From Macrostomum lignano (taxonomy: Eukaryota), in contig NIVC01000278.1 in assembly GCA_002269645.1 (NCBI GenBank), positions 1 through 64,000 of the forward strand: a stretch of DNA of 64,000 nt. Reading direction: 5' to 3'. Position numbers and translations under genes: made by a program. Shown here piece by piece: positions 10,481 through 59,146 of the stretch (within the stretch, counting starts at the first letter, position 1; every line of letters begins with the position of its first letter). The notes beneath the pieces are model-generated. The model was not told the origin of the DNA. It saw only the letters and a program-made list of their open reading frames with translations, and made no database searches.

Positions 10481-10556
10481 AACGTAAAAGTAAGCGAATT
10501 TTAAAGGAGCCACTATAATGCTAAGGAAATTGTCGCACTAGCTACTTATTGTCTGG

Positions 10557-14099: not shown

Positions 14100-14107
14100 T
14101 TTTCTCT

Positions 14108-15147: not shown

Positions 15148-15175
15148 TATTTATTTAAAATTTTCTTTTTAAAAA

Positions 15176-16182: not shown

Positions 16183-16198
16183 AATATTAAAATAAAAA

Positions 16199-16645: not shown

Positions 16646-16648
16646 TGA

Positions 16649-17161: not shown

Positions 17162-17168
17162 TTGGCAA

Positions 17169-17414: not shown

Positions 17415-17988
17415 TAAAAATTTATTTTTTTCAAAGGGTAAGGACCTGCGTTGATAATTTAAAGTCTTAGGGATTTGGTTTCGCGTTGCAAATTGAATGT
17501 GGGGAGAAAAATGCAGATTCTTTTCTGATTGCTTCCAAGATGTTATGGGTGGATGTTAGTGGATTATGTCAGTTTCAGTGAGCATAACAGGTGTCAGTGG
17601 ACACCTGTTATGCTCTGATTTTGTCAGGGATAATATGGATGGATTTAATACGATTATGTTCGAAGTTTTCGGAGCGAGGGCGACCCCCTTTTTTTCTGAT
17701 TCTGTCGGGGATAATATGGATGGATTTAATGGGATTATGGAGGACGTGTGAAAAATTTTGTCCCAGAAGCCCCCTCATTCATTCTACTGCAGTCACAGAA
17801 GCTGCTGCAGGCTGGGCGTCATTCGGTTGCAAGTTTAAAATGAAGCAAAGTTGAGATGCATTCATCCGCATGTTCATCCGCATGTTCATCCGCATGTTCA
17901 TCCGTTCATCCGGGTTCATCCGCATGCAACTGGGCTTCCAGTTGCATGCGGATCTGAGCATTGTAATGATGAACCCAGCCTCACTCAC

Positions 17989-20900: not shown

Positions 20901-23900
20901 GTGGCACGAGAAACTTGACGACTTCCCACTGACAACGTTCTACAGCAGATTCGGCAGCTTTGATGCAGCAGCGATCTCTGTTTGCTTGGTCAGCGATTTG
21001 TGAGACGAGAAACTTGACGACTTCTGAGTGACCATTTGTTGCTGCAGATTCCGCAGCGTCGATGCAGCAGCGATCTTTGTTTGCTTTGTCAGCGACTTGT
21101 GGAACGAGAAACTTGACGACTTCCCACTGACGATTTCTTACAGCAGATTCGGCAGCTTTGATGCAGCAGCGATCTCTGTTTGCTTGGTCAGCGACGTGTG
21201 AGACGAGAAACTCGACGACTTCCCACTGACGATTTCTTACAGCAGATTCGGCAGCGTTGATGCAGCAGCGATCTCTGTTTGCTTGGTCAGCGACTTGTGG
21301 CACGAGAAACTTGACGACTTCTAAGTGACCATTTGTTGCTGCAGATTCCGCAGCGTCGATGCAGCAGCGATCTTTGTTTGCTTTGTCAGCGACTTGTGGA
21401 ACGAGAAACTTGACGACTTCTAAGTGACTATTTCTTGCAGCAGATTTGGCAGCGTCGATGCAGCAGCGATCTCTGTTTGCTTGATGAGCGACTTGTGGCA
21501 CGAGAAACTTGACGACTTCTAAGTGACCATTTGTTGCTGCAGATTCCGCAGCGTCGATGCAGCAGCGATCTTTGTTTGCTTTGTCAGCGACTTGTGGAAC
21601 GAGAAACTTGACGACTTCTAAGTGACTATTTCTTGCAGCAGATTTGGCAGCGTCGATGCAGCAGCGATCTCTGTTTGCTTGATGAGCGACTTGTGGCACG
21701 AGAAACTTGACGACTTCTAAGTGACCATTTGTTGCTGCAGATTCCGCAGCGTGGATGCAGCAGCGATCTCTGTATGCTTGGTCAGCGACTTGTGGCACGA
21801 GAAACTTGACGACTTCTAAGTGACCTTTTTCTGCAGCAGATTCGGCAGCATCGATGCAGCAGCAATCTCTGTTTGCTTGGTCAGTGACTTGTGGCACGAG
21901 AAACTTGACGACTTCCCACTGACCATATATTGCAGCAAATACAGCAGCGTTGATGCAGCAGTGATCTCTGTTTGCTTGGTCAGCGACTTGTGACACGAGA
22001 AACTTGACGACTTCTAAGTGACCATTTGTTGCTTCAGATTCGGCAGCGTCGATGCAGCAGCGATCTTTGTTTGCTTTGTCAGCGACTTGTGGAACGAGAA
22101 ACTTGACGACTTCTAAGTGACTATTTCTTGCAGCAGATTCGGCAGCGTCGATGCAGCAGCGATCTCTGTTTGCTTGATGAGCGACTTGTGGCACGAGAAA
22201 CTTGACGACTTCTAAGTGACCATTTGTTGCTGCAGATTCCGCAGCGTCGATGCAGCAGCGATCTTTGTTTGCTTTGTCAGCGACTTGTGGAACGAGAAAC
22301 TTGACGACTTCTAAGTGACTATTTCTTGCAGCAGATTTGGCAGCGTCGATGCAGCAGCGATCTCTGTTTGCTTGGTCAGCGACTTGTGGCACGAGAAACT
22401 TGACGACTTCTAAGTGACCATTTGTTGCTGCAGATTCGGCAGCTTTGATGCAGCAGCGATCTTTGTTTGCTTTGTCAGCGACTTGTGGAACGAGAAACTT
22501 GACGACTTCTAAGTGACTATTTCTTGCAGCAGATTCCGCAGCGTCGATGCAGCAGCGATCTCTGTTTGCTTGATGAGCGACTTGTGGCACGAGAAACTTG
22601 ACGACTTCTAAGTGACCATTTGTTGCTGCAGATTCCGCAGCGTGGATGCAGCAGCGATCTCTGTTTGCTTGGTCAGCGACTTGTGACATGAGAAACTTGA
22701 CGGCTTCTAAGTGACCGTTGACTGCAGCAAATACAGCAGCTTCGAAGCAGCAGCGATCTCGGTTTCCTTGGTCAGTGACTTGTGGCACGAGAAACTTGAC
22801 GACTTCTAAGTGACCTTTTCCTGCAGCAGATATGGCAGCGTTGAAGCGGCAGCGATCTCGGTTTGCTTGATCAGCGACTTGTGGCACGAAAAACCTAACG
22901 GCTTGTAGGTGACCATTGACTGCAGCAAATACAGCAGCGTCGATGCAGCAGCGATCTCTGTTTCCTTGGTCAGCGACTCGTGGCACGAGAAACTCGACGA
23001 CTTCTAAGTGACCATTTGTTGCTGCAGATTCCGCAGCGTGGATGCAGCAGCGATCTCTGTATGCTTGGTCAGCGACTTGTGGCACGAGAAACTTGACGAC
23101 TTCTAAGTGACCTTTTTCTGCAGCAGATTCGGCAGCTTCGATGCAGCAGCAATCTCTGTTTGCTTGGTCAGTGACTTGTGGCACGAGAAACTTGACGACT
23201 TCCCACTGACCATATATTGCAGCAAATACAGCAGCGTTGATGCAGCAGTGATCTCTGTTTGCTTGGTCAGCGACTTGTGACACGAGAAACTTGACGACTT
23301 CCCACTGACGATTTCTTACAGCAGATTCGGCAGCTTTGATGCAGCAGCGATCTCTGTTTGCTTGGTCAGCGACGTGTGAGACGAGAAACTCGACGACTTC
23401 CCACTGACGATTTCTTACAGCAGATTCGGCAGCGTTGATGCAGCAGCGATCTCTGTTTGCTTGGTCAGCGACTTGTGGCACGAGAAACTTGACGACTTCT
23501 AAGTGACCATTTGTTGCTGCAGATTCCGCAGCGTCGATGCAGCAGCGATCTCTGTTTGCTTGATGAGCGACTTGTGGCACGAGAAACTTGACGACTTCTA
23601 AGTGACCATTTGTTGCTGCAGATTCCGCAGCGTCGATGCAGCAGCGATCTTTGTTTGCTTTGTCAGCGACTTGTGGAACGAGAAACTTGACGACTTCTAA
23701 GTGACTATTTCTTGCAGCAGATTTGGCAGCGTCGATGCAGCAGCGATCTCTGTTTGCTTGATGAGCGACTTGTGGCACGAGAAACTTGACGACTTCTAAG
23801 TGACCATTTGTTGCTGCAGATTCCGCAGCGTGGATGCAGCAGCGATCTCTGTATGCTTGGTCAGCGACTTGTGGCACGAGAAACTTGACGACTTCTAAGT

Positions 23901-26208
23901 GACCTTTTTCTGCAGCAGATTCGGCAGCATCGATGCAGCAGCAATCTCTGTTTGCTTGGTCAGTGACTTGTGGCACGAGAAACTTGACGACTTCCCACTG
24001 ACCATATATTGCAGCAAATACAGCAGCGTTGATGCAGCAGTGATCTCTGTTTGCTTGGTCAGCGACTTGTGACACGAGAAACTTGACGACTTCTAAGTGA
24101 CCATTTCTTGCAGCAGATTCGGCAGCGTCGATGCAGCAGCGATCTCTGTTTGCTTGATGAGCGACTTGTGGCACGAGAAACTTGACGACTTCTAAGTGAC
24201 CATTTGTTGCTGCAGATTCCGCAGCGTCGATGCAGCAGCGATCTTTGTTTGCTTTGTCAGCGACTTGTGGAACGAGAAACTTGACGACTTCTAAGTGACT
24301 ATTTCTTGCAGCAGATTTGGCAGCGTCGATGCAGCAGCGATCTCTGTTTGCTTGGTCAGCGACTTGTGGCACGAGAAACTTGACGACTTCTAAGTGACCA
24401 TTTGTTGCTGCAGATTCGGCAGCTTTGATGCAGCAGCAATCTTTGTTTGCTTTGTCAGCGACTTGTGGAACGAGAAACTTGACGACTTCTAAGTGACTAT
24501 TTCTTGCAGCAGATTTGGCAGCGTCGATGCAGCAGCGATCTCTGTTTGCTTGATGAGCGACTTGTGGCACGAGAAACTTGACGACTTCTAAGTGACCATT
24601 TGTTGCTGCAGATTCCGCAGCGTGGATGCAGCAGCGAACTCTGTTTGCTTGGTCAGCGACTTGTGACATGAGAAACTTGACGGCTTCTAAGTGACCGTTG
24701 ACTGCAGCAAATACAGCAGCTTCGAAGCAGCAGCGATCTCCGTTTCCTTGGTCAGCGACTTGTGGCACGAGAAACTTGACGACTTCTAAGTGACCTTTTC
24801 CTGCAGCAGATATGGCAGCGTTGAAGCGGCAGCGATCTCGGTTTGCTTGATCAGCGACTTGTGGCACGAAAAACCTAACGGCTTGTAGGTGACCATTGAC
24901 TGCAGCAAATACAGCAGCGTCGATGCAGCAGCGATCTCTGTATGCTTGGTCAGCGACTTGTGGCACGAGAAACTTGACGACTTCTAAGTGACCTTTTTCT
25001 GCAGCAGATTCGGCAGCTTCGATGCAGCAGCAATCTCTGTTTGCTTGGTCAGTGACTTGTGGCACGAGAAACTTGACGACTTCCCACTGACCATATATTG
25101 CAGCAAATACAGCAGCGTTGATGCAGCAGTGATCTCTGTTTGCTTGGTCAGCGACTTGTGACACGAGAAACTTGACGACTTCCCACTGACGATTTCTTAC
25201 AGCAGATTCGGCAGCTTTGATGCAGCAGCGATCTCTGTTTGCTTGGTCAGCGACGTGTGAGACGAGAAACTCGACGACTTCCCACTGACGATTTCTTACA
25301 GCAGATTCGGCAGCGTTGATGCAGCAGCGATCTCTGTTTGCTTGGTCAGCGACTTGTGGCACGAGAAACTTGACGACTTCTAAGTGACCATTTGTTGCTG
25401 CAGATTCCGCAGCGTCGATGCAGCAGCGATCTTTGTTTGCTTTGTCAGCGACTTGTGGAACGAGAAACTTGACGACTTCTAAGTGACTATTTCTTGCAGC
25501 AGATTTGGCAGAGTCGATGCAGCAGCGATCTCTGTTTGCTTGATGAGCGACTTGTGGCACGAGAAACTTGACGACTTCTAAGTGACCATTTGTTGCTGCA
25601 GATTCCGCAGCGTCGATGCAGCAGCGATCTTTGTTTGCTTTGTCAGCGACTTGTGGCACGAGAAACTTGACGACTTCTAAGTGACCTTTTTCTGCAGCAG
25701 ATTCGGCAGCTTCGATGCAGCAGCAATCTCTGTTTGCTTGGTCAGTGACTTGTGGCACGAGAAACTTGACGACTTCTAAGTGACCATTTGTTGCTGCAGA
25801 TTCCGCAGCGTCGATGCAGCAGCGATCTTTGTTTGCTTTGTCAGCGACTTGTGGAACGAGAAACTTGACGACTTCTAAGTGACTATTTCTTGCAGCAGAT
25901 TTGGCAGCGTCGATGCAGCAGCGATCTCTGTTTGCTTGATGAGCGACTTGTGGCACGAGAAACTTGACGACTTCTAAGTGACCATTTGTTGCTGCAGATT
26001 CCGCAGCGTCGATGCAGCAGCGATCTTTGTTTGCTTTGTCAGCGACTTGTGGAGCGAGAAACTTGACGTTTTCAACGCGACCATTGCGTGCAGTTTCTAA
26101 AGTCGCCTGAATGATGTCGCTTAAGTACCCCTGGGTTGCAGCGCGTCGAGCAGTTTGCGAGATGTTGTCGGTGGGGACGGGCTGATGGCGACTTTGATTT
26201 TGGTCCAT
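17989..26208 (-). CDS. Ankyrin-array cGAS-like receptor, paralog 1: exons 26208-19709, 18683-18630, 18359-17989; last (Mab-21 C-terminal) exon absent from window
   Basis: The 2167-aa ORF stop lies inside a GG|GTGAGT donor (phase 2). The 54-nt phase 2-2 micro-exon and 371-nt NTase exon have canonical AG/GT sites and keep frame. NTase motif GSYAEG...DSDIDW. Confidence 0.8.
20300..26070 (-). repeat. Coding 99-bp/33-aa ankyrin-like repeat array, about 58 units
   Basis: Consensus xxGHLEVVKFLVPQVADQANRDRCCIxAAxxAA, frame intact throughout. Followed by canonical ankyrin repeats (GATALMLAADAGH, GRTALSRACEAGH). Confidence 0.95.
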
Positions 26209-32814: not shown

Positions 32815-34255
32815 GAGGGATCAGATAGGGTGTGGGATCAGATAGGGTGTGGGATCAGATAGGGTGTGGGATCAGATAGGGTGTGGGATCAGATAGGGTG
32901 TGGGATCAGATAGGGTGTGGGATCAGATAGGGTGTGGAATCAGATAGGGTGTGGGATCAGATAGGGTGTGGGATCAGATAGGGTGTGGGATCAGATAGGG
33001 TGTGGGATCAGATAGGGTGTGGGATCAGATTGGGTGTGGGATCAGATTGGGTGTGGGATCAGATAGGGTGTGGGATCAGATAGGGTGTGGGATCAGATTG
33101 GGTGTGGGATCAGATAGGGTGTGGGATCAGATAGGGTGTGGGATCACATAGGGTGTGGGATCACATAGGGTGTGGGATCAGATAGGGTGTGGGATCAGAT
33201 AGGGTGTGGGATCACATAGGGTGTGGGATCAGATAGGGTGTGGGATCAGATAGGGTGTGGGATCAGATAGGGTGTGGGATCAGATAGGGTGTGGGATCAG
33301 ATAGGGTGTGGGATCAGATAGGGTGTGGGATCAGATAGGGTGTGGGATCAGATAGGGTGTGGGATCAGATAGGGTGTGGGATCAGATAGGGTGTGGGATC
33401 AGATAGGGTGTGGGATCAGATAGGGTGTGGGATCAGATAGGGTGTGGGATCAGATAGGGTGTGGGATCAGATAGGGTGTGGGATCAGATAGGGTGTGGGA
33501 TCAGATAGGGTGTGGGATCAGATAGGGTGTGGGATCGCATAGGGTGTGGGATCAGATAGGGTGTGGGATCAGATAGGGTGTGGGATCACATAGGGTGTGG
33601 GATCAGATAGGGTGTGGGATCAGATAGGGTGTGGGATCAGATAGGGTGTGGAATCAGATAGGGTGTGGGATCAGATAGGGTGTGGGATCAGATTGGGTGT
33701 GGGATCAGATAGGGTGTGGGATCAGATAGGGTGTGGGATCAGATAGGGTGTGGGATCACATAGGGTGTGGGATCACATAGGGTGTGGGATCAGATTGGGT
33801 GTGGGATCAGATTGGGTGTGGGATCAGATAGGGTGTGGGATCAGATAGGGTGTGGGATCAGATATCAGATAGGGTGTGGGATCAGATAGGGTGTGGGATC
33901 AGATAGGGTGTGGGATCAGATAGGGTGTGGGATCAGATAGGGTGTGGGATCAGATAGGGTGTGGGATCAGATAGGGTGTGGGATCAGATAGGGTGTGGGA
34001 TCAGATAGGGTGTGGGATCAGATAGGGTGTGGGATCAGATAGGGTGTGGGATCAGATAGGGTGTGGGATCAGATATGTGTGGGATCAGATAGGGTGTGGG
34101 ATCAGATAGGGTGTGGGATCAGATATGTGTGGGATCATATAGGGTGTGGGATCAGATAGGTGTGGGATCAGATAGGGTGTGGGATCAGATATGTGTGGGA
34201 TCATATAGGGTGTGGGATCAGATAGGTGTGGGATCAGATAGGGTGTGGGATCAGG
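32815..34255. repeat. 17-bp minisatellite (GGGATCAGATAGGGTGT)
   Basis: Visible tandem unit. Confidence 0.95.
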
Positions 34256-34356
34256 TGGCTGTCTATTTCCTAGAGAGCTCTGTGCTCTCGCCAACCTCTA
34301 CGTTCCTCTTTGTGCTCGTGGAGTTCCTCTCCGGGCTGGGTACTAAGGGTTACGTT

Positions 34357-34555
34357 TGGCTGTGTGAGGGCTGCCTGTGGCTGTGTGAGGGCTGCCTGTG
34401 GCTGTGTGAGGGCTGCCTTTGGCTGTGTGAGGGCTGCCTGTGGCTGTGTGAGGGCTGCCTGTGGCTGTGTGAGGGCTGCCTGTGGCTGTGTGAGGGCTGC
34501 CTTTGGCTGTGAGGGCTGCCTGTGGCTGTGTGAGGGCTGCCTGTGGCTGTGTGAG
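34357..34555. repeat. 21-bp minisatellite (GGCTGTGTGAGGGCTGCCTGT)
   Basis: Visible tandem unit. Confidence 0.9.
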
Positions 34556-36324
34556 GGCGGTCCTGCAGTCCCTGCCTGACCGTCAGAGGGCGGCGCAGCT
34601 CCAGGCAAGCCGAGACCTGGACGCTGGCGGAGTGGCTCGAATCGCAGGCCGAGGCGGCTGCTGCACTGCAGATGCTGCAGAGCCGAGCGGCCACCCACAG
34701 CCGGAAGTTCAGGAGGTGCCGCTGCTGGCGCTGCAGGCAGCCACCGGCGATTCTGCGACTGCCTGCTGGCTGAGGAGGTGCCGGCTGACCTTTGATGTTA
34801 TTGTGGCCTAGCAGCCGTTTGTACTTTTATTTTTGTCTGCAGGGATCTTGCAGGTGATCAACTGTAGGATTCTCATGTTGTATTCAGGAATTTTGATTTG
34901 TTAACTTTAAAATCGTGAAAGCTCTCAGCACGCGGCACTTTGAAGGCAGCATTGTGGGGCGGATAACTCAAAGGGTGATGTGATAGATACAATAAATGTA
35001 TATAGCATGCACGATAAGCAACTATTTAGGCCCTACTAGACAAACCTACTTGGAGCGTTCGGAGATTTTAAAACTATTGGCCCTAATCGCCTATCGCCGG
35101 TCGGCGAGTCCTACCAGTCTTTCTCCAATAGCCGCAGGTACAGTACCGGAAAAGAAAGAACGCAGGAGAAGACGAACCGAACGGATTTAGAGAGTGATAA
35201 TCCTAGCAAGAATGACTAATTTTGATTGACTTGACGATTTAATTAGATTTAATAAAGTTACAAAATTCAATGCGATTCGCGGCGCAGATGATTTGAACGA
35301 ACAATAATAACGATACAACGATTAGTAATAATTAGTTACGCAACTGGCAAGCGGATCTCAGCTGAGGAAGAAGAGGAACCGAACACGGGAGCACGGAGAA
35401 GACTCCTAACCCCTGGCCTAAACCAGAAGCTACACTCAAACGAGAGCCCTGCCGAATTGACCGTTCAACGGAGCACTGACTAAATTCTATCAGCGCTGCC
35501 CTTCAGTGTGACACTGAGGCCCTCTGGGTCGAGGCCACGTACTTGATCAGATCCGACAGTCTCTATCTAGACCGCGCTTAATAGCGACGACTTCAGACAG
35601 AAATTTGCCGTAGACGTTACGCTACAAGACTGAAGCGGTCGGGCAGGGAAGCAAAACACGGACCGGGGTGACGAACTCAGGCGCCTCAAAGCGCGAACCA
35701 AAACTAGGCAAAACGGCCGGGTAGCCGGAACAAAACCAAGGCCGGGGAAAGAGAGAGAGAGAAAAGTGAGATCCGATTGCCAAACACACTTTCATATATA
35801 GTCAGAGTCAAACCCCTCAAAACCCCCCTCAAGCCGGGTGGTGGTCGTCTGGCCGGCCGCTCGCTAAGCTGATTTGCACTGTGCCCGCGGCGCCGGGTAG
35901 ACTTGGATTTTGCCGCGTGCCAGGGTCCAGGCCGGTTCTGATTGGCTGACCGCGCAAAGCTGGGGTTCGCAGAAAAACTCACAATTGAGAGAGTCACAAT
36001 TGGTGTCTGACTTCTAACCTGTTTACACAAAATTGATTCTAACTAACAAGAAAAGTACATTGAAGACGTGACTAAATTAAAGCAAAATACAATAATTATC
36101 AACAATAATACAGAAGCTACTAACTAATAGAATTCAGAAATTACACAAAAGGTGCTCACACTACAGTGAGTTCGAGAAACCATGCACAAACTCTTCCATT
36201 ATTTTTCAAATTTAATGGCGACCTGGAAAAGGCAAGCAAACATACATGTACTACGAGTGTATTTTAACAAAGCTACATGAAATATTATGAAACAGCAATT
36301 GATAAAATAATGGAATTTTAGGTA

Positions 36325-36615
36325 ATGTTCATGAGGGAGCTGTCAGGCTGTCAGTCACTGAATGTTCATGAGGGAGCTGTCAGCCTGTCAGTCACTGAAT
36401 GTTCATGAGGGAGCTGTCAGCCTGTCAGTCACTGAATGTTCATGAGAGAGCTGTCAGGCTGTCAGTCACTGAATGCTCATGAGGGAGCTGTCAGCCTGTC
36501 AGTCACTGAATGTTCATGAGGGAGCTGTCAGGCTGTCAGTCACTGAATGCTCATGAGGGAGCTGTCAGGCTGTCAGTCACTGAATGTTCATGAGGGAGCT
36601 GTCAGCCTGTCAGTA
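36325..36615. repeat. 37-bp minisatellite (GAATGTTCATGAGGGAGCTGTCAGGCTGTCAGTCACT)
   Basis: Visible tandem unit, about 7-8 copies. Confidence 0.9.
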
Positions 36616-37129
36616 ACTCAATATTCATTCTGAGAGCAGGTTCTTAAATAAACCAGGAGCATGTACACACAATGTTTTAAGCCACAAAACACAAAATATT
36701 TATAAGATATCTATAGCAAAATATCTCAAACAGCTCCCACAAAAGCCAGAGAAGCTTACAAAATTCTGAGTTCAACTCGCCAGCTTCTTCCTGACCCAGC
36801 CGACCTTTTAGTTTTTCAGTTTCATGCAGACAACTGCTACCTGTAAATTTGGCTTGAATATTTTCATTAAACAGCATTGGCAATCGGGTATTGAATTCCG
36901 CAGAACAAAACTGCAGAGAAAAGCCCGCATCAAAGCAGACACGCAGTTTGAACGGAAAAAGCAATTCAGCATGCAGTGTGAATTGAATTGCAGCGCAAAT
37001 ATACAAAACTGCAGTTCATAGCAGGAGGGCTGCTGGCACTCGATGGCTTTGGACCTGCTCATTTCCTAAACAGGCAACAGAATCAGCAAAAGAAAAAACT
37101 ATAGACATTGATCCAACATCATGTAAAGA

Positions 37130-37625
37130 CAACCCAACAGCATGTACAGACAGTTCAACAGCATTTACAGACAACCCAACAGCATGTACAGACAATCCAA
37201 CGGCATGCACAGACAATCCAACAGCATGTACAGACAATCCAACAGCATGTACAGACAATCCAACAGCATGTACAGACAATCCAACAGCATGTACAGACAA
37301 TCCAACAGCATGTACAGACAATTCAACAGCATGTACAGACAATCCAACAGCATGTACAGACAATCCAACAGCATGTACAGACAATCCAACAGCATGTACA
37401 GACAATTCAACAGCAGGTACAGACAATCCAACAGCATGTACAGACAATCCAACAGCATGTACAGACAATTCAACAGCATGTACAGACAATCCAACAGCAT
37501 GTACAGACAATCCAACGGCATGCACAGACAATCCAACAGCATGTACAGACAATCCAACGGCATGCACAGACAATCCAACGGCATGCACAGACAATCCAAC
37601 GGCATGCACAGACAATCCAACAGCA
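37130..37625. repeat. 21-bp minisatellite (CAACAGCATGTACAGACAATC) just 3' of the paralog 2 stop
   Basis: Visible unit; explains the VHAVGLS / QQHVQTI ORFs. Confidence 0.92.
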
Positions 37626-37751
37626 TGTGGAGGTGTTTTCATGCAGAACCAGCAGAATCCCATCAAGTCAGCATGCGCCAGAATAAACAGTTTGATTTAA
37701 AAGTCTAAAGTACATGAAATTTGTATCAGCATCGAACACTGCATCAGGCAG

Positions 37752-40700
37752 TCAGTCTGACTCAGCCTTCCTTTTCCGACCTCGACTTTGCGACGCGGCT
37801 TTGAGAACTCCGGCTGCATCAAGTATCTCCAGCTTTTCCCTGACCCAGCCGATCTTCTCCTCGTCCTGCGTCTCCATGGCGACGCGTCTCTCTTTCTCGA
37901 TCATCTCCATCTGCTGCAGGCTGAGCTCCACGTGCTCGCGGCAGTCGCTGTAGTGAGCCAGAGTGAGCAGCTCCTCCAAGTCCGGGTCTCCAAGCAGCTG
38001 TTCAATCCAATGATCGAATGCGATTGCAGGTGCGCGATTGCGGAGCAGCTCAGCTTGGAGACTCCAGCTCAGGCAGCGGAAGTTCACGTACAGGTGGGAG
38101 GAGAGAGGCTGCGACAGTCTGGCTGTGAACAGAGTCTGCGTGAACTCGGGAAGGAATGGGAAGCGAGGCGGAGAGTCGCAGGGGAGGCAGAACCTCCACG
38201 CCCAGTCTGAGTCTTCTGGCAGTTTTGGAATGTACCACTCTTCTCGAATATAATGTGGCTTCAACCCTGACTCAACCTGATGTCTCTGCAGCTCCATCGC
38301 GAGTCTCTCAGCCTCCTTAGATTCTCCGAACTTCAAATGCGCCATGGCGGTCATGCACAGGGCGGCGCACTTGCACCACTGCAGCCGATGATGATGCAGG
38401 AGACTGAGCTGCCTCATCAGGGTGTCTCTGTCGCTCGATTCAGACTGCAGCTCGCCCACACACTGGTGCAACAGACTGTACACGTCTGCGAACTTGTAGT
38501 GAATTTCTGGATAGCAATCACTTCCTTTCCTGATCTCCGTGACAGCAGGCGGCGCTGTCAGAGGGAGCAGAGTGAACGGGTGAAAGTAGAACTTCTCTGA
38601 CTGCAGAGGTCTCACGAGTCTCCTCAGCTGCTCGACCACTCCGCCGATGTCGCTTCTCAGCTCACAAAGTCGGTCTCGAACCCTCGCCTTCGTGTTGTCG
38701 AAGTCGCCGCCGATTCCAGCGTTCTTGAAGTAGAGCGGAGCGTCGGGCATGAAGAAGTGCGGCATGCACTCATCGGGCGAGCTGCTGCTCGAGTCGATGA
38801 AGCTCAGCATCATGTCGAGAGACTCGTTGAGCAGAGCGATCAGATTGTGGGGCTGCCAAGTTTCAATCGAAGGATCTGTGCCATGCTTCTCCAGCATGAA
38901 GAATAGCAGAGACTTTGCATGGTAGGTCTTGAGTCCAGGTGTGTCCAGAGTGAGCGGCAAGTGTCTCTTGAAGATGAACTTGATGAGTGTGAACAGCTGG
39001 CCCTGGACTGTGCTCAGCCGTCTCATGATGTCTTTTTCTTGGAAGCTGAAACTCACTCTGAGCTCGTTGGTCGAGCTCGGTCTGGTCGCTTGAACGAGGT
39101 GAACAAATCCAGGTAATTGAAAAAGTTTTTTAATTCTGTCCTCACAGAAACTGCTGCAGCAGTGGATCGCTTGGCACGTGTCCTGTGCAGGCCTCACACC
39201 GTATGCCGTGGCTGTCACTGCAGGTTGGCTGCCTGCAGAGCGCAGTGAGCAGAGATTCGCTTTGTGGCGAGTGAAAAACGTTGGTTGTTTTAAAACTGCT
39301 TGAATGTGTTAGTTGATTTCGTTCTGTTTTTGTGTCAGTGCTACTACTGTAATTAATGAATAAAGCTATGTATTCGTTGAAATGCTAATTGCTTCATGGA
39401 GTTCATGGTAAAAAATCTTTCTTAGTATATTGGATTTTACTTTCTTTCAGATCAGGATTTAACAACTTGCGTATTTTAAGAGTTTTTATACTGTGTGCAT
39501 ACCATTCCTAAATAATTATTTGATATAACCTCCGAAATGCTGAGGCGGTGCAATTGCAAGAATTTCAATTTAATGCGAAATGAGTGCTGAATCGCATTTT
39601 AGAACGGACTCAAACTCCGGTTGAACTTGTGAACTCTGAAGTTCAAGCACTCCGTATCGAATAAAAATTGAACAGAGTTTTGGACTTTGATAGTGAGCCC
39701 AGCGTCACTGACCTGCTCCGACTGGCACCTGTGCGTGGCCCTCATTGACCTGCAGCGGAGTGGCGTCTTTGCATGAATCCTGCCGACTCTTTCGTCCATT
39801 GCAGCCACCTTCCAGATGGAACTGCTGCCCAGGAACCAGCACAGTCCAGTCAATGTCCGAGTCTGCAGCTGTCCTGCCGTTCACTTGCACCAGACTGTTG
39901 GCCCAGCCCTCTGCGTAGCTGCCCGTCATCTGCCTGCGATAGTCATCCTGTGTGAGGACTCGAGCGACTTCTTCCAGCCAGTTAGCCAGTCTCTGCTGAC
40001 ACTTTGCTCTCTGCTCGGTGAATCCCGCCTCGCTGAGCAGTCGATGCAGCTCCTCGTCTGAGAGTCTGGAAGGATGCGAGTTTGTGGAGCAGGAGAGGTC
40101 AGAGTGCAGGTGCAGTCAGTGGAGGCGGATTTAAAAATTGCAGTGGCCCAATCTCAATCCAAGGAAGGCAGGGGGCAGTGAAAGCGGTCAGACTCACGGG
40201 TGGAGGCGGTGAGCAACTAGTTGTGGGTGCTGTGTGTTTCTGGAATGTGTGAAAGATTTGCGAGGTAATGTAGCGAAGTGATTGCAAGTAGAGAGACAAA
40301 TGGCAACTGACTCGGTGGGATTTAGCAGCCGCAGCACCTGCCGCTGCTCAAATCGCTGTGCCACCTGCGCACACGTGAGACCCTGATTGTCTCGATGACT
40401 GGCATCGGCTCCATTGTCAATAAGAATCTTGGCTGCTCGAACGTGACCGGCTTGGCACGCTCGTGACAGAGCAGTCCGACCCTGACTGTCTTCAGCACGC
40501 ACTGACGCACCGAGATCGATGAGTTTGTGAATGAGTTCGTGATGACCTGCATCAGCTGCGAGCATGAGAGCAGTGGCTCCTGTGTTGTCGTCTGAGAGAT
40601 CGACATGCTGTCTGCTGAATTGCTCATGATTGAGCAGCGTGACAGCAAGAGCGACGTGTCTTTGAGAGATTGAGAGACGGAGCAGCTGTGTGATTTGAGC

Positions 40701-43700
40701 TGGCTGCATTTGAGAGAGGGTTTTGTTGAGAACGGAGTTTCTGCCTTCGATGGCCATTGCTGCAGTGAAGCTGAGGATGGTGCTGGATTGGAAGAGCCAC
40801 TCGGGCTCAAGGCGGAGAGAAGCAACGACATTTTCCTGAAGACGAGAGCAAGCTGCGACTACGTACTGGAAACGGAGATTCGCTTTTAGATCTGGACTTG
40901 AGAGACACGCGATGAGCAACTTGACGATTTCAAAGTGACCATTGTCTACAGCATATTCGGCAGCTTTGATGCAGCAGGTGTCCCTGTTTGATTGGTCATT
41001 GATTTGTGGGACGAGAAACTCGACGATCTCAAAGTGACCATATTCTGCAGCTTTTTCGGCAGCACTGATGCAGCAGGTGTCTCTGTTTGATTGGTCACTG
41101 ATTAGTGGGACGAGAAACTGGACGGTTTGAAAGTGACCACGGAGTGCAGCAGATTCAGCAGCTTTGATGCAGCAGGTGTCCCTGTTTGATTGGTTATTGA
41201 TTTGTGAGAGGAGAAACTCTGCGATTTCAAAGTGACCCTTGACTGCAGCTTTTTCGGCAGCATTGATGCAGCAGGTGTCCCTGCTTGATTGGTCATTGAT
41301 TTGTGGGACGAGAAACTTGACGATTTCAAAGTGACCACGAATTGCAGCATATTCGGCAGCTTTGATGCAGCAAGTGTCCCTGTTTGATTGGTCATTGATT
41401 TGTTGGACGAGAAACTTGACGATTTCAAAGTGACCACGAATTGCAGCATATTCGGCAGCTTTGATGCAGCAGGTGTCCCTGTTTGATTGGTCATTGATTT
41501 GTTGGACGAGGAAATTGACGATTTCAAAGTGAACACTGTCTGCAGCTTCTTCGACAGCTTTGATGCAGCAGGTGTCCCCGTTTGATTGGTCATTGATTTG
41601 TTGGACGGGAAACTTGAAGAATTCAAAGTGATCATTGTCTGCAGCTTTTTCGGCAGCTTTGATACAGCAGGTGTCCCTGTTTGATTGGTCATTGATTTGT
41701 GGGACGAGAAACTTGACGATTTCAAAGTGACCACGGAGTGCAGCTTCTTCGGCAGCTTTGATGCAGCAGGTGTCCCTGTTTGATTGGTCATTGATTTGTG
41801 GGACGAGAAACTTGACGATTTCAAAGTGACCACGAATTGCAGCTTTTTCGGCAGCTTTGATGCAGCAGGTGTCCCTGTTTGATTGGTCATTGATTTGTGG
41901 GACGAGAAACTTGACGATTTCAAAGTGACCACTGTTTGCAGCTTTTTCGGCAGCTTTGATGCAGCAGGTGTCCCTGTTTGATTGGTCATTGATTTGTGAG
42001 ACGAGAAACTCAACGATTTCAAAGTGACCATTGTCTGCAGCATTTTCGGCAGCTTTGATGCAGCAGGTGTCCCTGTTTGATTGGTCATTGATTTGTGAGA
42101 CGAGAAACTCAACGATTTCAAAGTGACCATTGTCTGCAGCATTTTCGGCAGCTTTAATGCAGCAGGTGTCCCTGTTTGATTGGTCATTGATTTGTGGGAC
42201 GAGAAACTTGATGATTTCAAAGTGACCACGAATTGCACCATTTTCGGCAGCTTTGATGCAGCAGGTGTCCCTGTTTGATTGATCATTGATTTGTGGGACG
42301 AGAAACTTGATGATTTCAAAGTGACCACGAATTGCACCATTTTCGGCAGCTTTGATGCAGCAGGTGTCCCTGTTCGATTGGTCATTGATTTGTGGGACAA
42401 GAAATTTGACGATTTCAAAGTGACCACGAATTGCAGCTTTTTCGGCAGCTTTGATGCAGCAGGTGTCCCTGTTTGATTGGTCATTGATTTGTGGGACGAG
42501 AAACTTGACGATTTCAAAGTGACCACTGTTTGCAGCTTTTTCGGCAGCTTTGATGCAGCAGGTGTCCCTGTTTGATTGGTCATTGATTTGTGAGACGAGA
42601 AACTCAACGATTTCAAAGTGACCATTGTCTGCAGCATTTTCGGCAGCTTTGATGCAGCAGGTGTCCCTGTTTGATTGGTCATTGATTTGTGGGACGAGAA
42701 ACTTGATGATTTCAAAGTGACCACGAATTGCAGCTTTTTCGGCAGCTTTGATGCAGCAGGTGTCCCTGTTTGATTGGTCATTGATTTGTGGGACGAGAAA
42801 CTTGACGATTTCAAAGTGACCACGAATTGCACCATTTTCGGCAGCTTTGATGCAGCAGGTGTCCCTGTTTGATTGATCATTGATTTGTGGGACGAGAAAC
42901 TTGATGATTTCAAAGTGACCACGAATTGCACCATTTTCGGCAGCTTTGATGCAGCAGGTGTCCCTGTTTGATTGATCATTGATTTGTGGGACGAGAAACT
43001 TGATGATTTCAAAGTGACCACGAATTGCACCATTTTCGGCAGCTTTGATGCAGCAGGTGTCCCTGTTCGATTGATCATTGATTTGTGGGACGAGAAACTT
43101 GATGATTTCAAAGTGACCACGAATTGCACAATTTTCGGCAGCTTTGATGCAGCAGGTGTCCCTGTTTGATTGATCATTGATTTGTGGGACGAGAAACTTG
43201 ATGATTTCAAAGTGACCACGAATTGCACCATTTTCGGCAGCTTTGATGCAGCAGGTGTCCCTGTTCGATTGGTCATTGATTTGTGGGACAAGAAATTTGA
43301 CGATTTCAAAGTGACCACGAATTGCAGCTTTTTCGGCAGCTTTGATGCAGCAGGTGTCCCTGTTCGATTGGTCATTGATTTGTGGGACGAGAAACTTGAC
43401 GATTTCAAAGTGACCACTGTTTGCAGCTTTTTCGGCAGCTTTGATGCAGCAGGTGTCCCTGTTTGATTGGTCATTGATTTGTGGGACGAGAAACTTGACG
43501 ATTTCAGAGTGACCACTGTTTGCAGCTTTTTCGGCAGCTTTGATGCAGCAGGTGTCCCTGTTTGATTGGTCATTGATTTGTGGGACGAGAAACTTGACGT
43601 CTTCAAAGTGACCATTGAGTGCAGCAGTGCAAGTGGCCTGGAGGAAGTCGCTGAAGTACCCATGGTTTGCAGCGCGTCGAGCAGTTTGAGTGATGTTGCC

Positions 43701-43739
43701 GGTAGTGACGGGCTGATGCAGACTTTTATTTTGGCTCAT
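37752..43739 (-). CDS. Ankyrin-array cGAS-like receptor (Mab-21 family NTase), paralog 2, complete: exons 43739-40312, 40239-40198, 40065-39713, 39232-37752 (about 1767 aa)
   Basis: All junctions are GT/AG and phase-compatible (2,2,1). NTase GS...DSDID plus a probable third acid in PAQDTCQAI. Mab-21 motifs LRVSFSFQEK, KTYHAKSLLF, MPHFFMP. The track ORF start at 43910 is intronic polypyrimidine tract; the true ATG (MSQNK) follows an acceptor at 43744. Confidence 0.85.
40910..43620 (-). repeat. Coding 99-bp/33-aa ankyrin-like repeat array, about 27 units
   Basis: Consensus xxGHFEIVKFLVPQINDQSNRDTCCIKAAExAA. Confidence 0.95.
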
Positions 43740-44189
43740 TTTTCTGGAAAGCGGTGTAGGATGAGAAATGGTAAGAGTGGGATAAGAATTAAGGAGAAAG
43801 AGAGGAAGGGAGAAAGAGGGGGACTGAGTGAGAAAGAGAGACGAGGCTGGGAGAAAGAGGGGACAGAAGGAAAAAGAGAGGATGGGAGGAAGAGGCAGAG
43901 TGAGAAGCAAGGGAGGGAGGGAAATAGAGAGGAAGGAGTGGGAGTGAGAAAGCGGGGAGGGGAAAAGAGGGGCATGAAAGGAGAAGAGGGGAGGGTGAAG
44001 GAAGGGACGGAGGGAGAAAGAGGGGGTGAGTCTGTTAGATGAAGAGATTGTAGCGGTTCCAAGACCTTCTCTGGGTGTCTGAGTGAAAATTCTGAGTTAA
44101 TTTCTCATGATTCTCATCGAAAATACGAGTGATTTTGTAGGTATAGGTCAAGGTAATCTTTGTCCTGTACAGTTCTGTAGTTGAGACTG

Positions 44190-44930
44190 AGAGCAAAGTG
44201 AAGGTAATTCTGTCCTAGTTGGGAGCAAAGTGAAGGTAATTCTGTCCTAGTTGGGAGCAAAGTGAAGGTAATTCCGTTCTAGTTGGGAGCAAAGTGAAGG
44301 TAATTCTGTCCTAGTTGGGAGCAAAGTGAAGGTAATTCCGTTCTAGTTGGGAGCAAAGTGAAGGTAATTCTATCGTAGTTGGGAGCAAAGTGAAGGTAAT
44401 TCCGTTCTAGTTGGGAGCAAAGTGAAGGTAATTCTATCGTAGTTGGGAGCAAAGTGAAGGTAATTCCGTTCTAGTTGGGAGCAAAGTGAAGGTAATTCCG
44501 TTCTAGTTGGGAGCAATGTGAAGGTAATTCTATCCTAGTTGGGAGCAAAGTGACGGTAATTCCGTTCTAGTTGGGAGCAAAGTGAAGGTAATTCTATCCT
44601 AGTTGGGAGCAAAGTGAAGGTAATTCTATCCTAGTTGGGAGCAAAGTGAAGGTAATTCCGTTCTAGTTGGGAGCAAAGTGAAGGTAATTCTATCCTAGTT
44701 GGGAGCAAAGTGAAGGTAATTCCGTTCTAGTTGGGAGCAAAGTGAAGGTAATTCTATCCTAGTTGGGAGCAAAGTGAAGGTAATTCTGTCCTAGTTGGGA
44801 GCAAAGTGAAGGTAATTCTATCCTAGTTGGGAGCAAAGTGAAGGTAATTCTATCCTAGTTGGGAGCAAAGTGAAGGTAATTCCGTTCTAGTTGGGAGCAA
44901 AGTGAAGGTAATTCTATCCTAGTTGGGAGC
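44190..44930. repeat. 32-bp minisatellite (GGGAGCAAAGTGAAGGTAATTCTGTCCTAGTT), with a single inverted copy at about 45325-45352
   Basis: About 23 visible copies. The reverse complement AGAATTACCTTCACTTTGCTCCCAA lies downstream. Confidence 0.92.
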
Positions 44931-45520
44931 AGCAACTACAGGCGGCGTAGAAAATTTTAAGAAAAATAGTCTAGTTTGAACCAAAAGTGGTAAAAGTAAG
45001 CGAAATGGGGCACCGCTATATTCTGTAGATGCTTGAGCCTTCGTCGCTCAGTCTCTAAGATTCTTGTGTGCGGCATGCTTTTTCCGACTTTGGGTCAGAC
45101 AGATATTCAATCGTTGCCACATTTCGCTTACTTTTACCACTTTTTGTTTTGATGTTTTGATGCTATCACCTTAAACAGCTATTTTTATAAGTCTAAAGCT
45201 CACACCCAAGCCACAGAAAAATGCCACATTTGAAATTAATTTTGTCATATTCGGGCTTGAAAGGGTTTACTTTTTATAGAGCACACCCACTAGCTTTGTT
45301 AGTAGTAAGGACGTTGAGAATTGAACAGAATTACCTTCACTTTGCTCCCAATTTTGCTCACGTTGCCATGTAGTCCTGTACGCTTCATGCTATTGCCTGT
45401 GCGAAAGAGGGGAAGGGAGAGGGAGGGCGGGAGGGAGAAGGAGAGGAGGGAGCAGAAATGCAGCTGAAGAATTTTTAAATGAATTTTAAAGTGACTATGA
45501 ATCTTACCTGTGATCTTTGG

Positions 45521-45732
45521 CTGCTGTCAGAGTAGCAGCTGTCAGTCACCGGTGCTTCTCCTGTCTGCTGTCAGAGTAGCAGCTGTCAGTCACCGGTGCT
45601 TCTCCTGTCTGCTGTCAGAGTAGCAGCTGTCAGTCACCGGTGCTTCTCCTGTCTGCTGTCAGAGTAGCAGCTGTCAGTCACCGGTGCTTCTCCTGTCTGC
45701 TGTCAGAGTAGCAGCTGTCAGTCACCGGTGCT
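45521..45732. repeat. 44-bp tandem repeat (about 5 copies) in the putative first exon/promoter of paralog 2
   Basis: Units start at 45521, 45565, 45609, 45653 and 45697. A single copy of the motif lies in the paralog 1 homologous region. Confidence 0.9.
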
Positions 45733-58600: not shown

Positions 58601-59146
58601 TTAGAAGGAGAGGTGGGAGGAGAAGGTAGGAGGAGAGGGTTAAAGAAAATATACAAGGAGGGGGCGAGGGGCAAGTGAGGAGGGTGGAAGGCAGTCGAAA
58701 AAGGAAGTTCAGGCATTTTATTTCTCAACTTACCTAACCCTGTTCTCCAAAGTATTTTCAGCTTCGCTGAACCAAAACTCATCCTAGCAGTGAGCACTGA
58801 GTGAGCAGGGTTTTGACAAGTCCCGAACAAATGCGATGCGACAGCCCCCCTGAGTTCCCTCACCTATGAGCACAATCCCCTAAACTGACTGCGAGGCTAA
58901 CCTTTCTTCAGAGATTTGAAATCGAGATGCCTTTTTGCACCCCCTAGGGGGATTGGTGTTGGGAATTTTATCTCTCGCGCCGCTCACCCCGAGGCAACGG
59001 AGATGGTTGAAGGTCGCTCAGCTTTCACCGCACTGGCATCCTAACTATTAATTATGATGATGACATTTCTCGATAAGAATTCTCCAATTGGACATGTAAT
59101 GCTTTTAAACTCACCAATTGTTCTTCGATTTTCTAAATCAATACAG

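What the first reader, a model, noticed from the sequence alone, without database searches (positions are those of the whole stretch)
37752..43739. Giant ankyrin-array fused to a cGAS-like nucleotidyltransferase, hidden by splicing
Seen: three separate track ORFs (1238 aa, 74 aa, 488 aa) join into one about 1767-aa protein through four exons with canonical, phase-compatible junctions (GA|GTCAGT 40311, AG|40239, CC|GTGAGT 40197, AG|40065, G|GTCAGT 39712, AG|39232). The architecture is about 27 atypical ankyrin repeats, canonical ankyrin caps, an NTase core (GS, DxD in DSDID, probable third Asp in QDTCQAI), a Mab-21 helical lobe and a helical tail. Established: Mab-21/cGAS-like receptors (cGLRs) are innate sensors that make cyclic dinucleotides, and ankyrin-fused members are known in some invertebrates. 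Inference: this is a ligand-activated second-messenger synthase whose very long repeat arm is the sensor.
Basis: partly seen in the sequence, partly recalled or inferred. Interest (0 to 1): 0.88.

Follow-up and report, generated by a model that had tools for sequence, protein, structure and literature searches.

The report
Flatworm ankyrin-array cGAS-like enzyme gene
This is a real spliced gene of the flatworm Macrostomum lignano that joins 27 near-identical ankyrin-type repeats to a cGAS-like nucleotidyltransferase. The protein family is already catalogued as predicted cGAS-like receptors, so only the very long repeat array, which the public gene model omits, is new.

Summary
On the minus strand, exons 43739..40312, 40239..40198, 40065..39713 and 39232..37752 join through GT-AG introns into one open 1767-aa product.

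The window is Macrostomum lignano DNA. The public model BOX15_Mlig004872g1 (797 aa) already joins the canonical ankyrins to the NTase. It starts at an internal Met and omits the 27 x 33-aa array, whose frame is broken in the older assembly.

All three introns sit at the same positions as introns in a paralogue's gene model (Mlig016402g1).

The C-terminal half is a Mab-21/cGLR-type NTase:
- Pfam Mab-21_C passes its cut-off.
- The family profile hits only cGAS and cGLR1 in the PDB.
- hhalign against Mab-21 proteins gives 99.85% probability.
- GS, DxD and the third Asp are conserved across paralogues.

The family is not new. Li et al. 2023 list M. lignano ankyrin-fused predicted cGLRs. They cloned NTase-domain constructs of two paralogues 78-81% identical to this protein, and neither is marked among their 15 active enzymes.

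Enzyme activity, ligand, a sensor role for the array and a STING partner are all untested.

A second paralogue with 58 repeat units lies next door.

Verdict: new member of a known kind, moderate interest.

The parts
40312..43739 (-). Exon 1 (3428 nt), with ATG at 43739..43737. It encodes the N-terminal leader, the 27-unit array, a linker and the canonical ankyrin repeats.
   Evidence: One continuous ORF. The leader MSQNKSLHQ is homologous to the N-terminus of P0008 (MGQNQSRHQ) and of the neighbouring gene (MDQNQSRHQ). An AG lies just upstream of the ATG (ttccagaaaaATG).
40902..43574 (-). Array of 27 tandem units of exactly 33 aa (99 nt). The consensus is NDQSNRDTCCIKAAEKAAIRGHFEIVKFLVPQI. These are atypical ankyrin repeats.
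   Evidence: TRF finds 27.3 copies, 93% matches and 0 indels. Three units alone score Ank_4 E 6e-15 and Ank_2 E 7e-11. Variation is concentrated at unit positions 16, 17, 19 and 20, just before the GH.
40359..40610 (-). Canonical ankyrin repeats (GATALMLAADAGHHELIHKLIDLGA... through ...GADASHRD), which cap the array on its C-terminal side.
   Evidence: Pfam Ank, Ank_2, Ank_3 and Ank_5 hits at exon-1 residues 1044-1127 and on the isolated segment. The AF2 model has pLDDT 80-93 here.
40240..40311 (-). Intron 1 (72 nt, GTCAGT...CCAG). It is in frame with no stop, and the public model retains it as a 24-aa insert.
   Evidence: Only P0001 carries the insert SVAICLSTCNHFATLPRKSFTHSR among 21 paralogues. 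The homologous 84-nt stretch in paralogue locus L002 contains a stop and is spliced out of the annotated model.
40198..40239 (-). Exon 2 (42 nt; completes the Glu codon split by intron 1, then encodes NTQHPQLVAHRLHP). It is probably a linker micro-exon.
   Evidence: A 42-nt exon sits at the same position in L002/P0008. It is present in P0002, P0008 and P0009 and absent from P0005, P0013 and P0014.
40066..40197 (-). Intron 2 (132 nt, GTGAGT...CCAG), which must be spliced.
   Evidence: The ORF stops at 40194 inside the donor. It is spliced in P0001.
39713..40065 (-). Exon 3 (353 nt). It encodes the N-terminal helix of the NTase, the GS motif (39923..39918) and DSDID (39863..39849).
   Evidence: GS and D-S-D-I-D are invariant or nearly invariant in 21 paralogues. 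They align to GS and SDxD of Mab-21 proteins.
39233..39712 (-). Intron 3 (480 nt, GTCAGT...GCAG, 37% GC).
   Evidence: It is spliced in P0001 and in all paralogue models (GAG|SQPAVTA). The homologous intron in L002 is about 17 kb.
37752..39232 (-). Exon 4 (1481 nt including the stop). It carries the third catalytic Asp (39182..39180), the Mab-21 C-terminal helical lobe (Pfam hit 38948..38733) and a 279-aa family-specific helical tail (38591..37755).
   Evidence: Pfam Mab-21_C scores 24.7 bits against a 24.1 cut-off and is found in 8 of 9 family members. cGAS hits fall on this lobe. The tail has no Pfam match but is predicted helical with pLDDT mostly 75-95.

Best explanation
The locus is an intact, spliced Macrostomum lignano gene with three or four coding exons. 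It encodes a protein of about 1750-1790 aa (about 198 kDa).

The protein has these parts, in order:
- A short leader.
- 27 near-identical 33-residue atypical ankyrin repeats.
- A linker.
- Two to three canonical ankyrin repeats.
- A Mab-21/cGAS-like nucleotidyltransferase with an intact catalytic triad.
- A family-specific helical tail.

It belongs to a large expansion seen here only in Macrostomum proteins, plus one unnamed metagenome fragment. There are at least 87 clusters at 50% identity. Published work has already listed members of this family as ankyrin-fused predicted cGAS-like receptors.

Shown here: gene structure, domain homology, conservation of catalytic residues, and tandem duplication with a 58-unit neighbour.

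Inferred:
- The enzyme makes a nucleotide second messenger when activated.
- The ankyrin part is a protein- or ligand-binding or regulatory platform. Its variable residues sit on the usual ankyrin binding face.
- The array grew by recent unit and block duplication.

The product, the ligand and the downstream receptor are unknown.
For: Gene structure:
- The product is an open 1767 aa.
- Introns 2 and 3 are used in the public model P0001, which is 100% identical over the 610-aa C-terminal query in the search table, with one Y/S mismatch on direct comparison.
- All three introns and the 42-nt exon 2 are conserved in the P0008 locus.

Ankyrin array:
- Pfam Ank_2 E 3e-182 on exon 1.
- Three units alone score Ank_4 E 6e-15.
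- 27 units of exactly 33 aa with no indels.

NTase:
- Mab-21_C passes its gathering cut-off and is found in 8 of 9 members, best E 3e-8.
- The family profile against the PDB hits only cGAS (E 4e-5) and cGLR1.
- Foldseek places cGAS 8g10 (E 5e-6, TM 0.52 on the target) as the only non-ankyrin hit in the top 50.
- The profile search of 1.84 billion proteins has a distant tier at E 1e-11 to 1e-15. Of 29 proteins taken from it, 26 carry Pfam Mab-21 and all 29 carry Mab-21_C.
- hhalign gives 99.85% probability and E 8e-31 over 282 columns, with GS, SDxD and the third Asp aligned.
- G235/S236, D257/D259 and D322 (P0001 numbering) are invariant or nearly so across paralogues down to 38% identity.
- In the AF2 model, GS follows a strand, and DxD and the third Asp each sit at the start of a strand, as expected for this fold.

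Literature (Li et al. 2023):
- Ankyrin-fused cGLRs exist.
- M. lignano PAA68676.1 (= P0008) is listed with Ank_2 domains.
- Five M. lignano proteins were cloned for the screen.

Variation in the array is concentrated at the positions just before GH. These match the randomised positions 13/14 of designed ankyrin binders (from my own knowledge). A crude pN/pS is 1.55 there against 0.50 elsewhere.
Against: - No enzymatic activity has been shown for any member. The five M. lignano constructs in the published screen, including paralogues 78% and 81% identical, have an empty 'Note' column, so they are not among the 15 active enzymes. Those constructs lacked the ankyrins, and many cGLRs are inactive without their ligand.
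- The Pfam Mab-21 NTase model (PF03281) does not hit this protein, and Mab-21_C passes only narrowly.
- The fold match is modest (rmsd 11 A). The domain-only model was poor (pLDDT 59, best hit MAB21L1 at E 0.11).
- The loop between GS and DxD carries a conserved 8-residue insertion not seen in relatives.
- The catalytic core has pI 6.4, whereas nucleic-acid-sensing cGLRs tend to be basic.
- Most flatworms lack cGLRs. The six flatworms in Table S5 of Li et al. are listed with no cGLR and no STING, and the planarian S. mediterranea lacks cGAS and STING. STING was not tested in M. lignano.
- No direct transcript evidence for the array was available here.
- The pN/pS estimate ignores that the units are not independent.
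Confidence: 0.6

Rival explanations
1. The enzyme is a cGLR-type synthase, but the long array is not the sensor. It acts instead as a scaffold, oligomerisation or localisation module, or as an autoinhibitory arm. Ligand recognition would lie on the Mab-21 core, the extended activation loop or the conserved C-terminal tail.
For: - In characterised cGLRs, the ligand binds a surface on the core.
- Array length varies widely in the family: 3 units in P0008, 7 in P0037, 27 here and 58 next door. The core and tail stay conserved. That fits a dispensable or tunable arm better than a specific sensor.
- 27 near-identical units offer little surface diversity.
Against: - The variable positions fall on the canonical ankyrin binding face.
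- The core is not basic, so a classical nucleic-acid groove is not evident.
- No direct data either way.
Confidence: 0.25
2. The Mab-21 domain is not a second-messenger synthase. It could be a non-catalytic adaptor, as proposed for MAB21L1 or MiD51. Or it could transfer nucleotides to another substrate, such as RNA or protein.
For: - Paralogue cores are not flagged as active in the published screen.
- PF03281 is not hit.
- The SDIDW motif and the long GS-to-DxD spacing resemble general Pol-beta NTases.
- One member has a weak MTPAP-like hit at E 0.097.
- No STING is known in flatworms.
Against: - GS, DxD and the third Asp are strictly conserved across paralogues down to 38% identity, which argues for catalysis.
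- The only solved relatives found by sequence are cGAS and cGLR1.
- The nearest large family carries both Mab-21 domains.
Confidence: 0.15
3. The array is not part of the protein. It would be an unstable minisatellite, or an assembly artefact, lying upstream of a 797-aa protein that starts at the internal Met, as annotated.
For: - The public model starts at MAIEGRNS.
- The window is full of non-coding minisatellites.
- A second frame of the array is also open (853-aa ORF), so openness alone proves little.
- In the other assembly the array frame is broken.
Against: - The period is exactly 3 x 33 with zero indels over 27 units.
- The units are significant ankyrin matches.
- The same units and the same N-terminal leader are coding in P0008 and P0037.
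- The frame links a conserved start Met to the conserved linker.
- Array length is essentially the same in a second assembled copy.
- pN/pS is about 0.5 outside the variable positions.
Confidence: 0.08

Closest known systems
Ankyrin-fused predicted cGLRs of Macrostomum lignano listed by Li et al. 2023 (for example PAA68676.1 / BOX15_Mlig016402g1 = P0008, and PAA93208.1 / BOX15_Mlig001946g3)
   Same: Same family:
- 78-81% identity over the NTase, Mab-21 lobe and tail.
- Same N-terminal leader.
- Same 33-aa repeat type.
- Same canonical ankyrins.
- Same intron positions.
   Different: - P0008 has 3 array units, against 27 here.
- Intron 3 is about 17 kb there, against 480 nt here.
- This gene's public model lacks the array altogether.
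Invertebrate Mab-21/cGLR clade: unnamed proteins of 600-900 aa from eukaryotic assemblies that carry Pfam Mab-21 and Mab-21_C, some with TPR repeats
   Same: - Homologous catalytic core (hhalign 99.85%, E 8e-31), with GS, SDxD and the third Asp aligned.
- Shared motifs downstream of the third Asp: [W/L]R[I/V]SFS..E[R/K], YH.KT..F and W.P.NL.
   Different: - Only 24% identity.
- The relatives have Pfam PF03281, which this protein does not reach.
- They lack the 8-residue insertion between GS and DxD.
- They are fused to TPR repeats or to nothing, not to ankyrin arrays.
Vertebrate cGAS and Drosophila cGLR1 (solved structures)
   Same: - Bilobed Mab-21 NTase.
- The family profile hits only these in the PDB, on the helical lobe.
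- cGAS is the only non-ankyrin fold match.
   Different: - No zinc-thumb motif H(X5)CC(X6)C.
- No basic N-terminal tail.
- Core pI is 6.4.
- A large N-terminal ankyrin arm and a 279-aa C-terminal tail.
- Product and ligand are unknown.
[quoted passage not shown] 2023)
   Same: Same design principle: a cGLR core with appended protein-interaction repeats, in a species with a large cGLR expansion.
   Different: - A different phylum.
- The coral has 7 STING genes, while STING is unknown in M. lignano.
- No near-identical array of 27-58 units is reported there.

Membership tests
Mab-21 / cGAS-like receptor (cGLR) family | Mab-21 C-terminal helical (HhH/H2TH-like) lobe | tested here: met
   - PF20266 scores 24.7 bits against a 24.1 cut-off, E 2.7e-5.
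- 8 of 9 family members match, best E 3e-8.
- cGAS chains match this lobe at E 4e-5.
Mab-21 / cGAS-like receptor (cGLR) family | Pol-beta-type NTase core with a G[S/G] motif, [D/E]h[D/E] and a third acidic residue | tested here: met
   - GS at residues 1205-1206, DSDID at 1225-1229 and D1292.
- They are invariant or nearly so in 21 paralogues.
- They align to the same motifs in Mab-21 proteins.
- Their strand positions in the AF2 model fit the fold.
- Caveat: the Pfam PF03281 model itself does not hit.
Mab-21 / cGAS-like receptor (cGLR) family | cGAS-like bilobed three-dimensional fold | tested here: inconclusive
   - Model of P0001 (pLDDT 74): cGAS 8g10_A at E 5.4e-6, TM 0.52 on the target, but rmsd 11 A.
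- Domain-only model: pLDDT 59, best hit MAB21L1 at E 0.11.
Mab-21 / cGAS-like receptor (cGLR) family | Synthesis of a cyclic di- or oligonucleotide second messenger | not testable with these tools
   This needs biochemistry. In the published screen, the five M. lignano constructs have no 'active' note.
Mab-21 / cGAS-like receptor (cGLR) family | Activation by a ligand (pattern recognition) | not testable with these tools
   No ligand is known. Core pI of 6.4 argues weakly against nucleic-acid sensing by the core.
Mab-21 / cGAS-like receptor (cGLR) family | A cognate receptor such as STING in the same genome | not tested
- M. lignano is absent from the stored Table S5 of Li et al..
- The six flatworms in that table are listed with no cGLR and no STING, and S. 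mediterranea lacks STING.
Ankyrin repeat | 33-residue helix-turn-helix repeat that matches ankyrin profiles | tested here: met
   - 27 units of exactly 33 aa.
- Three units score Ank_4 at 55 bits (cut-off 22.7) and Ank_2 at 43 bits (cut-off 27.3).
Ankyrin repeat | TPLH motif at the start of helix 1 and a GADxN hairpin loop | tested here: not met
   - Array units have DTCCIKAAEKAA in place of G-TPLH-AA, so helix 1 is about 4 residues longer.
- The loop PQINDQSNR is about 4 residues shorter.
- The two or three C-terminal repeats are canonical (GATALMLAA...GASV, GRTALSRAC...GADA).
Vertebrate cGAS orthologue | Zinc-thumb H(X5)CC(X6)C used in DNA binding | tested here: not met
   A regular-expression search of the 1767-aa product finds no match.

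The most novel reading that the evidence does not exclude
The two adjacent arrays (27 and 58 near-identical units) could be fast-evolving recognition modules. Variation sits on the ankyrin binding face, and the two assembled copies differ by whole-unit gains and losses. On this reading, minisatellite-like expansion, contraction and unit shuffling would diversify the specificity or valency of a cGLR sensor arm in the germline. That would be a repeat-driven way of generating innate receptor diversity, in a phylum otherwise thought to have lost cGLR signalling, and possibly acting through a receptor other than STING.
Probability: 0.12. Interest if true: 0.75.

Novelty: new member of a known kind. 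Interest (0 to 1): 0.36.

Why it matters
The finding corrects a public gene model, from 797 aa to about 1767 aa. It shows that M. lignano ankyrin-cGLR genes can carry arrays of 27 and 58 near-identical repeats, placed side by side.

Published biochemical tests of this family used cores without the ankyrins. If the ankyrin arm is needed for activation, that could explain why none was flagged as active.

M. lignano can be studied by RNAi and transgenesis. It is also an exception among flatworms, which mostly lack cGLRs. It could therefore show what cGLR-type enzymes do when a classical STING pathway may be missing.

Tried and rejected
- My first splice reconstruction was out of frame because I misread two acceptor coordinates by one base. 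One search corrected it.
- The PDB profile search with the full-length alignment A1 was swamped by ankyrin proteins, as was the Foldseek search of the full model. I repeated the sequence search with a C-terminal-only alignment.
- The second structure prediction, on the C-terminal part with 9 sequences, was poor (pLDDT 58.9). Its fold search gave nothing significant.
- An exact look-up of the exon 1 product found no record.
- The gene's own locus tag (Mlig004872g1) was not found in the stored supplements of Li et al., some of which are truncated.
- Literature searches for Macrostomum with cGAS, STING or Mab-21 gave nothing specific.
- I did not search for STING in M. lignano. The word-seeded protein search would be saturated by vertebrate STINGs, so a negative result would mean nothing.
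- I considered and rejected a bacterial or viral origin. The window is 98.5% identical to M. lignano contig NIVC01002066.1.
- The last exon of the neighbouring paralogue was sought by tblastn and not found in window 1..17980.
Full report
WHAT IS IN THE SEQUENCE

The window is eukaryotic and rich in minisatellites.

- GA|GTCAGT, with GT at 40311.
- ...TTCCAG|AAAC, with the exon starting at 40239.
- CC|GTGAGT, with GT at 40197.
- ...TTCCAG|ACTC, with the exon starting at 40065.
- CAG|GTCAGT, with GT at 39712.
- ...CTGCAG|GCAG, with the exon starting at 39232.

Joining 43739..40312, 40239..40198, 40065..39713 and 39232..37752 gives 5304 nt with one terminal stop and a 1767-aa product. My first try failed only because I misread two acceptor coordinates by one base.

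Introns 2 and 3 must be removed, because the frame is closed at 40194 and at 39705. Intron 1 is 72 nt with no stop. Splicing it, retaining it, or skipping the 42-nt exon 2 all stay in frame.

WHERE IT COMES FROM, AND WHAT IS ALREADY ANNOTATED

The C-terminal 610 aa match a Macrostomum lignano protein, BOX15_Mlig004872g1 (P0001, 797 aa), reported at 100% identity over full coverage, with one Y/S mismatch on direct comparison. About 35 further hits are all M. lignano, apart from one unnamed metagenome fragment.

P0001 already joins the canonical ankyrins to the NTase across introns 2 and 3. It retains intron 1 as a 24-aa insert and starts at an internal Met (MAIEGRNS), downstream of the whole array.

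Its contig (NIVC01002066.1, locus L001) is collinear with window 44931..32964 at 98.5% identity. Within the gene, the two copies differ only by substitutions and three indel events, all inside the array: +98, +98 and -198 nt. These leave the unit count essentially unchanged but break the frame in L001, giving ORFs of 702 and 607 aa in different frames.

That is the likely reason the public model misses the array. So the 'hidden' part is the array, not the NTase.

SUPPORT FOR THE SPLICE MODEL

Among 21 paralogues:
- Only P0001 has the intron 1 insert.
- P0002, P0008 and P0009 read NPTE|NPQH..., which is the spliced form with exon 2.
- P0005, P0013 and P0014 read NPTE|ISD..., which lacks exon 2.

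In the P0008 locus (L002), the annotated model removes an 84-nt intron at the same position. That intron contains a stop and is homologous to ours (SVAIC...FTHSR). The model keeps a 42-nt exon 2 and removes the next intron. Intron 3 there is about 17 kb.

The start Met and leader (MSQNKSLHQ...) are shared with P0008 (MGQNQSRHQ...) and with the neighbouring gene (MDQNQSRHQ...).

THE ARRAY

TRF reports a 99-nt unit x 27.3 copies with 93% matches and 0% indels. At protein level there are 27 units of exactly 33 aa at 43574..40902, with consensus NDQSNRDTCCIKAAEKAAIRGHFEIVKFLVPQI.

Three units alone are significant ankyrin matches: Ank_4 E 6e-15 and Ank_2 E 7e-11. The units are atypical. TPLH is replaced by TCCI, helix 1 is about four residues longer and the hairpin loop is about four residues shorter.

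Variation among units is concentrated at positions 16, 17, 19 and 20, just before the GH. By my own knowledge of designed ankyrin binders, that corresponds to the randomised binding-face positions 13/14. A crude pN/pS is 1.55 there and 0.50 elsewhere. The units are not independent, so this is only indicative.

Unit types recur in blocks (KAANS, KAAIR, NGAIR x n, NAADN), which indicates recent block duplication. The last nine units are more diverged.

A second frame of the array is also open. Openness alone is therefore not evidence of coding. The 3 x 33 period without indels, the ankyrin profile matches and the homology to coding repeats in paralogues are the evidence.

THE CATALYTIC HALF

- Pfam finds Mab-21_C just above its cut-off (24.7 against 24.1 bits) and nothing else. 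8 of 9 family members match it, best E 3e-8.
- A profile of the C-terminal half hits only cGAS (E 4e-5) and cGLR1 among 177,635 PDB sequences.
- An AF2 model of P0001 (pLDDT 74, pTM 0.68) has GS after a strand, and DxD and the third Asp each at the start of a strand.
- Its only non-ankyrin Foldseek hit in the top 50 is cGAS: E 5.4e-6, TM 0.52 on the target, rmsd 11 A.
- A domain-only model was too poor to use.
- A profile search of 1.84 billion representatives gives 790 hits, 87 of them at E <= 1e-30. All of those I checked are M. lignano.
- Of 29 proteins taken from the distant tier of that search (E 1e-11 to 1e-15), 26 carry Pfam Mab-21 and all 29 carry Mab-21_C. Some also have TPR repeats.
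- hhalign between the two families gives 99.85% probability and E 8e-31 over 282 columns, with GS, SDxD and the third Asp aligned.
- These residues are invariant or nearly so across paralogues down to 38% identity.

Differences from relatives:
- A conserved 8-residue insertion between GS and DxD.
- No zinc thumb, and a core pI of 6.4.
- A conserved 279-aa helical tail with no Pfam match.

WHAT IS KNOWN

Li et al. 2023 (PMC9980059) make these points:
- They describe about 3000 predicted cGLRs.
- They state that nematodes and most platyhelminths have none other than Mab21-like proteins.
- Some cGLRs are fused to ankyrin or TPR repeats.
- Table S2 lists M. lignano proteins, including PAA68676.1 (= P0008, 81% identical to ours), with Ank_2 domains.
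- Table S3 shows five M. lignano proteins cloned for the screen. These include PAA68676.1 and PAA93208.1, which is close to P0012 and about 78% identical to ours.
- For the four constructs whose start can be placed, the cloned sequence begins at or just before the NTase, so the ankyrins are left out. The 'Note' column that marks the 15 active enzymes is empty for all five.
- The authors note that many cGLRs are inactive in vitro, probably for lack of the right ligand.

A 2026 paper reports that the planarian S. mediterranea has no cGAS or STING.

So the architecture and the family assignment are already in the literature. Activity, ligand and receptor are open.

NEIGHBOURHOOD

A tandem paralogue lies next door on the same strand:
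- An ORF at 26208..19705 (2167 aa) has 58 units of 33 aa and the same linker and canonical ankyrins.
- It has a GTGAGT donor and an NTase exon at 18322..17987, which is 82% identical to ours.
- Its last exon is not in the window.
- The region beyond holds minisatellites and an integrase-core fragment at 15313..16182.
- Given the 17-kb intron 3 in the P0008 gene, the exon may simply lie beyond the window. Or this copy may be disrupted.

VERDICT

The gene is a bona fide member of the M. lignano ankyrin-fused Mab-21/cGLR family with an intact catalytic triad. The most likely function is a regulated nucleotide second-messenger synthase whose ankyrin part binds a partner or ligand. No step of that mechanism has been shown.

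What is new is the corrected gene model and the extreme, recently expanded arrays. Novelty: new member of a known kind. Interest: moderate (0.36).

Noticed in passing
window 17987..26208 (- strand): A tandem paralogue of the focal gene lies on the same strand. It is a 2167-aa ORF with 58 units of 33 aa (99-nt array at 20317..26093, 87% matches, no indels). It has the same linker and canonical ankyrins and a GTGAGT donor near 19712. Its NTase exon at 18322..17987 is 82% identical to ours. No last exon is found in window 1..17980.
   Followed up: partly
window 15313..16182 (+) and 1..14000: The sequence where the neighbour's last exon would be expected holds an integrase-core (rve) fragment (E 2.9e-7, just under the Pfam cut-off) and AT-rich minisatellites. 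These are a 23-nt unit x 279 copies at 1..6259, 23-nt arrays at 7928..10490 and 12088..13372, and duplicated 18-nt arrays at 10552..11071 and 13434..13968. This suggests either a long intron loaded with transposon remains or a disrupted gene copy.
   Followed up: partly
L001 (NIVC01002066.1) against window 40900..43600: The two assembled copies are 98.2% identical in the gene. They differ by whole-unit-sized indels in the array (+98, +98, -198 nt), which also shift the frame in L001. This could be assembly error, an allelic or homeologous difference, or real array instability.
   Followed up: partly
P0008, P0043 (paralogues); window 43739: Some paralogues start MGQNQS or MGNQNS, which fits the N-myristoylation pattern MGxxxS (from my own knowledge). 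The focal gene starts MSQNKS and its neighbour MDQNQS, so both lack Gly2. Membrane anchoring may therefore differ among family members.
   Followed up: no
window about 39860..39150 (residues about 1243-1300 of the product): Conserved Cys and His residues lie in and around the insertion between the DxD strand and the third-Asp strand. C90, H112 and C145 of alignment A2 are invariant, and there are also a DTC motif and a CC pair. This might be a metal-binding site. AF2 confidence is low here.
   Followed up: no
window 39917..39864 (loop between GS and DSDID): A nearly invariant 8-residue insertion (within NSLVQVNGRT) sits in the loop that corresponds to the cGAS activation loop. It is absent from the Mab-21 relatives in the hhalign alignment. 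The model has pLDDT below 50 here.
   Followed up: no
P0007 (UniRef M. lignano model, 1036 aa): After a complete family core, this model continues into a second, more divergent NTase module (GSYSEGWGNSL...SDIDV...RPAMD). It is either a tandem double-cGLR protein or a chimeric gene model that spans two adjacent genes.
   Followed up: no
window 36324..37628 and 44191..45732: Non-coding minisatellites flank the gene closely. A 21-nt unit x 24.7 copies (37111..37628) and a 37-nt unit x 8.2 copies (36324..36628) lie just 3' of the stop. A 32-nt unit x 23 copies (44191..44931) and a perfect 44-nt unit x 4.8 copies (45521..45732) lie 5' of the start.
   Followed up: no
window 59054..60502 (+): A 482-aa ORF has C2H2 zinc fingers near its C-terminus (zf-H2C2_2 E 3.7e-12). 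It is probably an exon of an unrelated gene.
   Followed up: no
window 16199..16645 (+): A 148-aa ORF gives a short Pfam Adeno_PX match (28 bits over about 30 residues) in a Gly/Ala-rich stretch. This is most likely a low-complexity artefact next to the integrase fragment.
   Followed up: no
array units, window 40902..43574: Every unit carries an invariant Cys-Cys pair (DTCCI) where canonical ankyrins have TPLH. That gives 56 cysteines in the array. The meaning is unknown.
   Followed up: no
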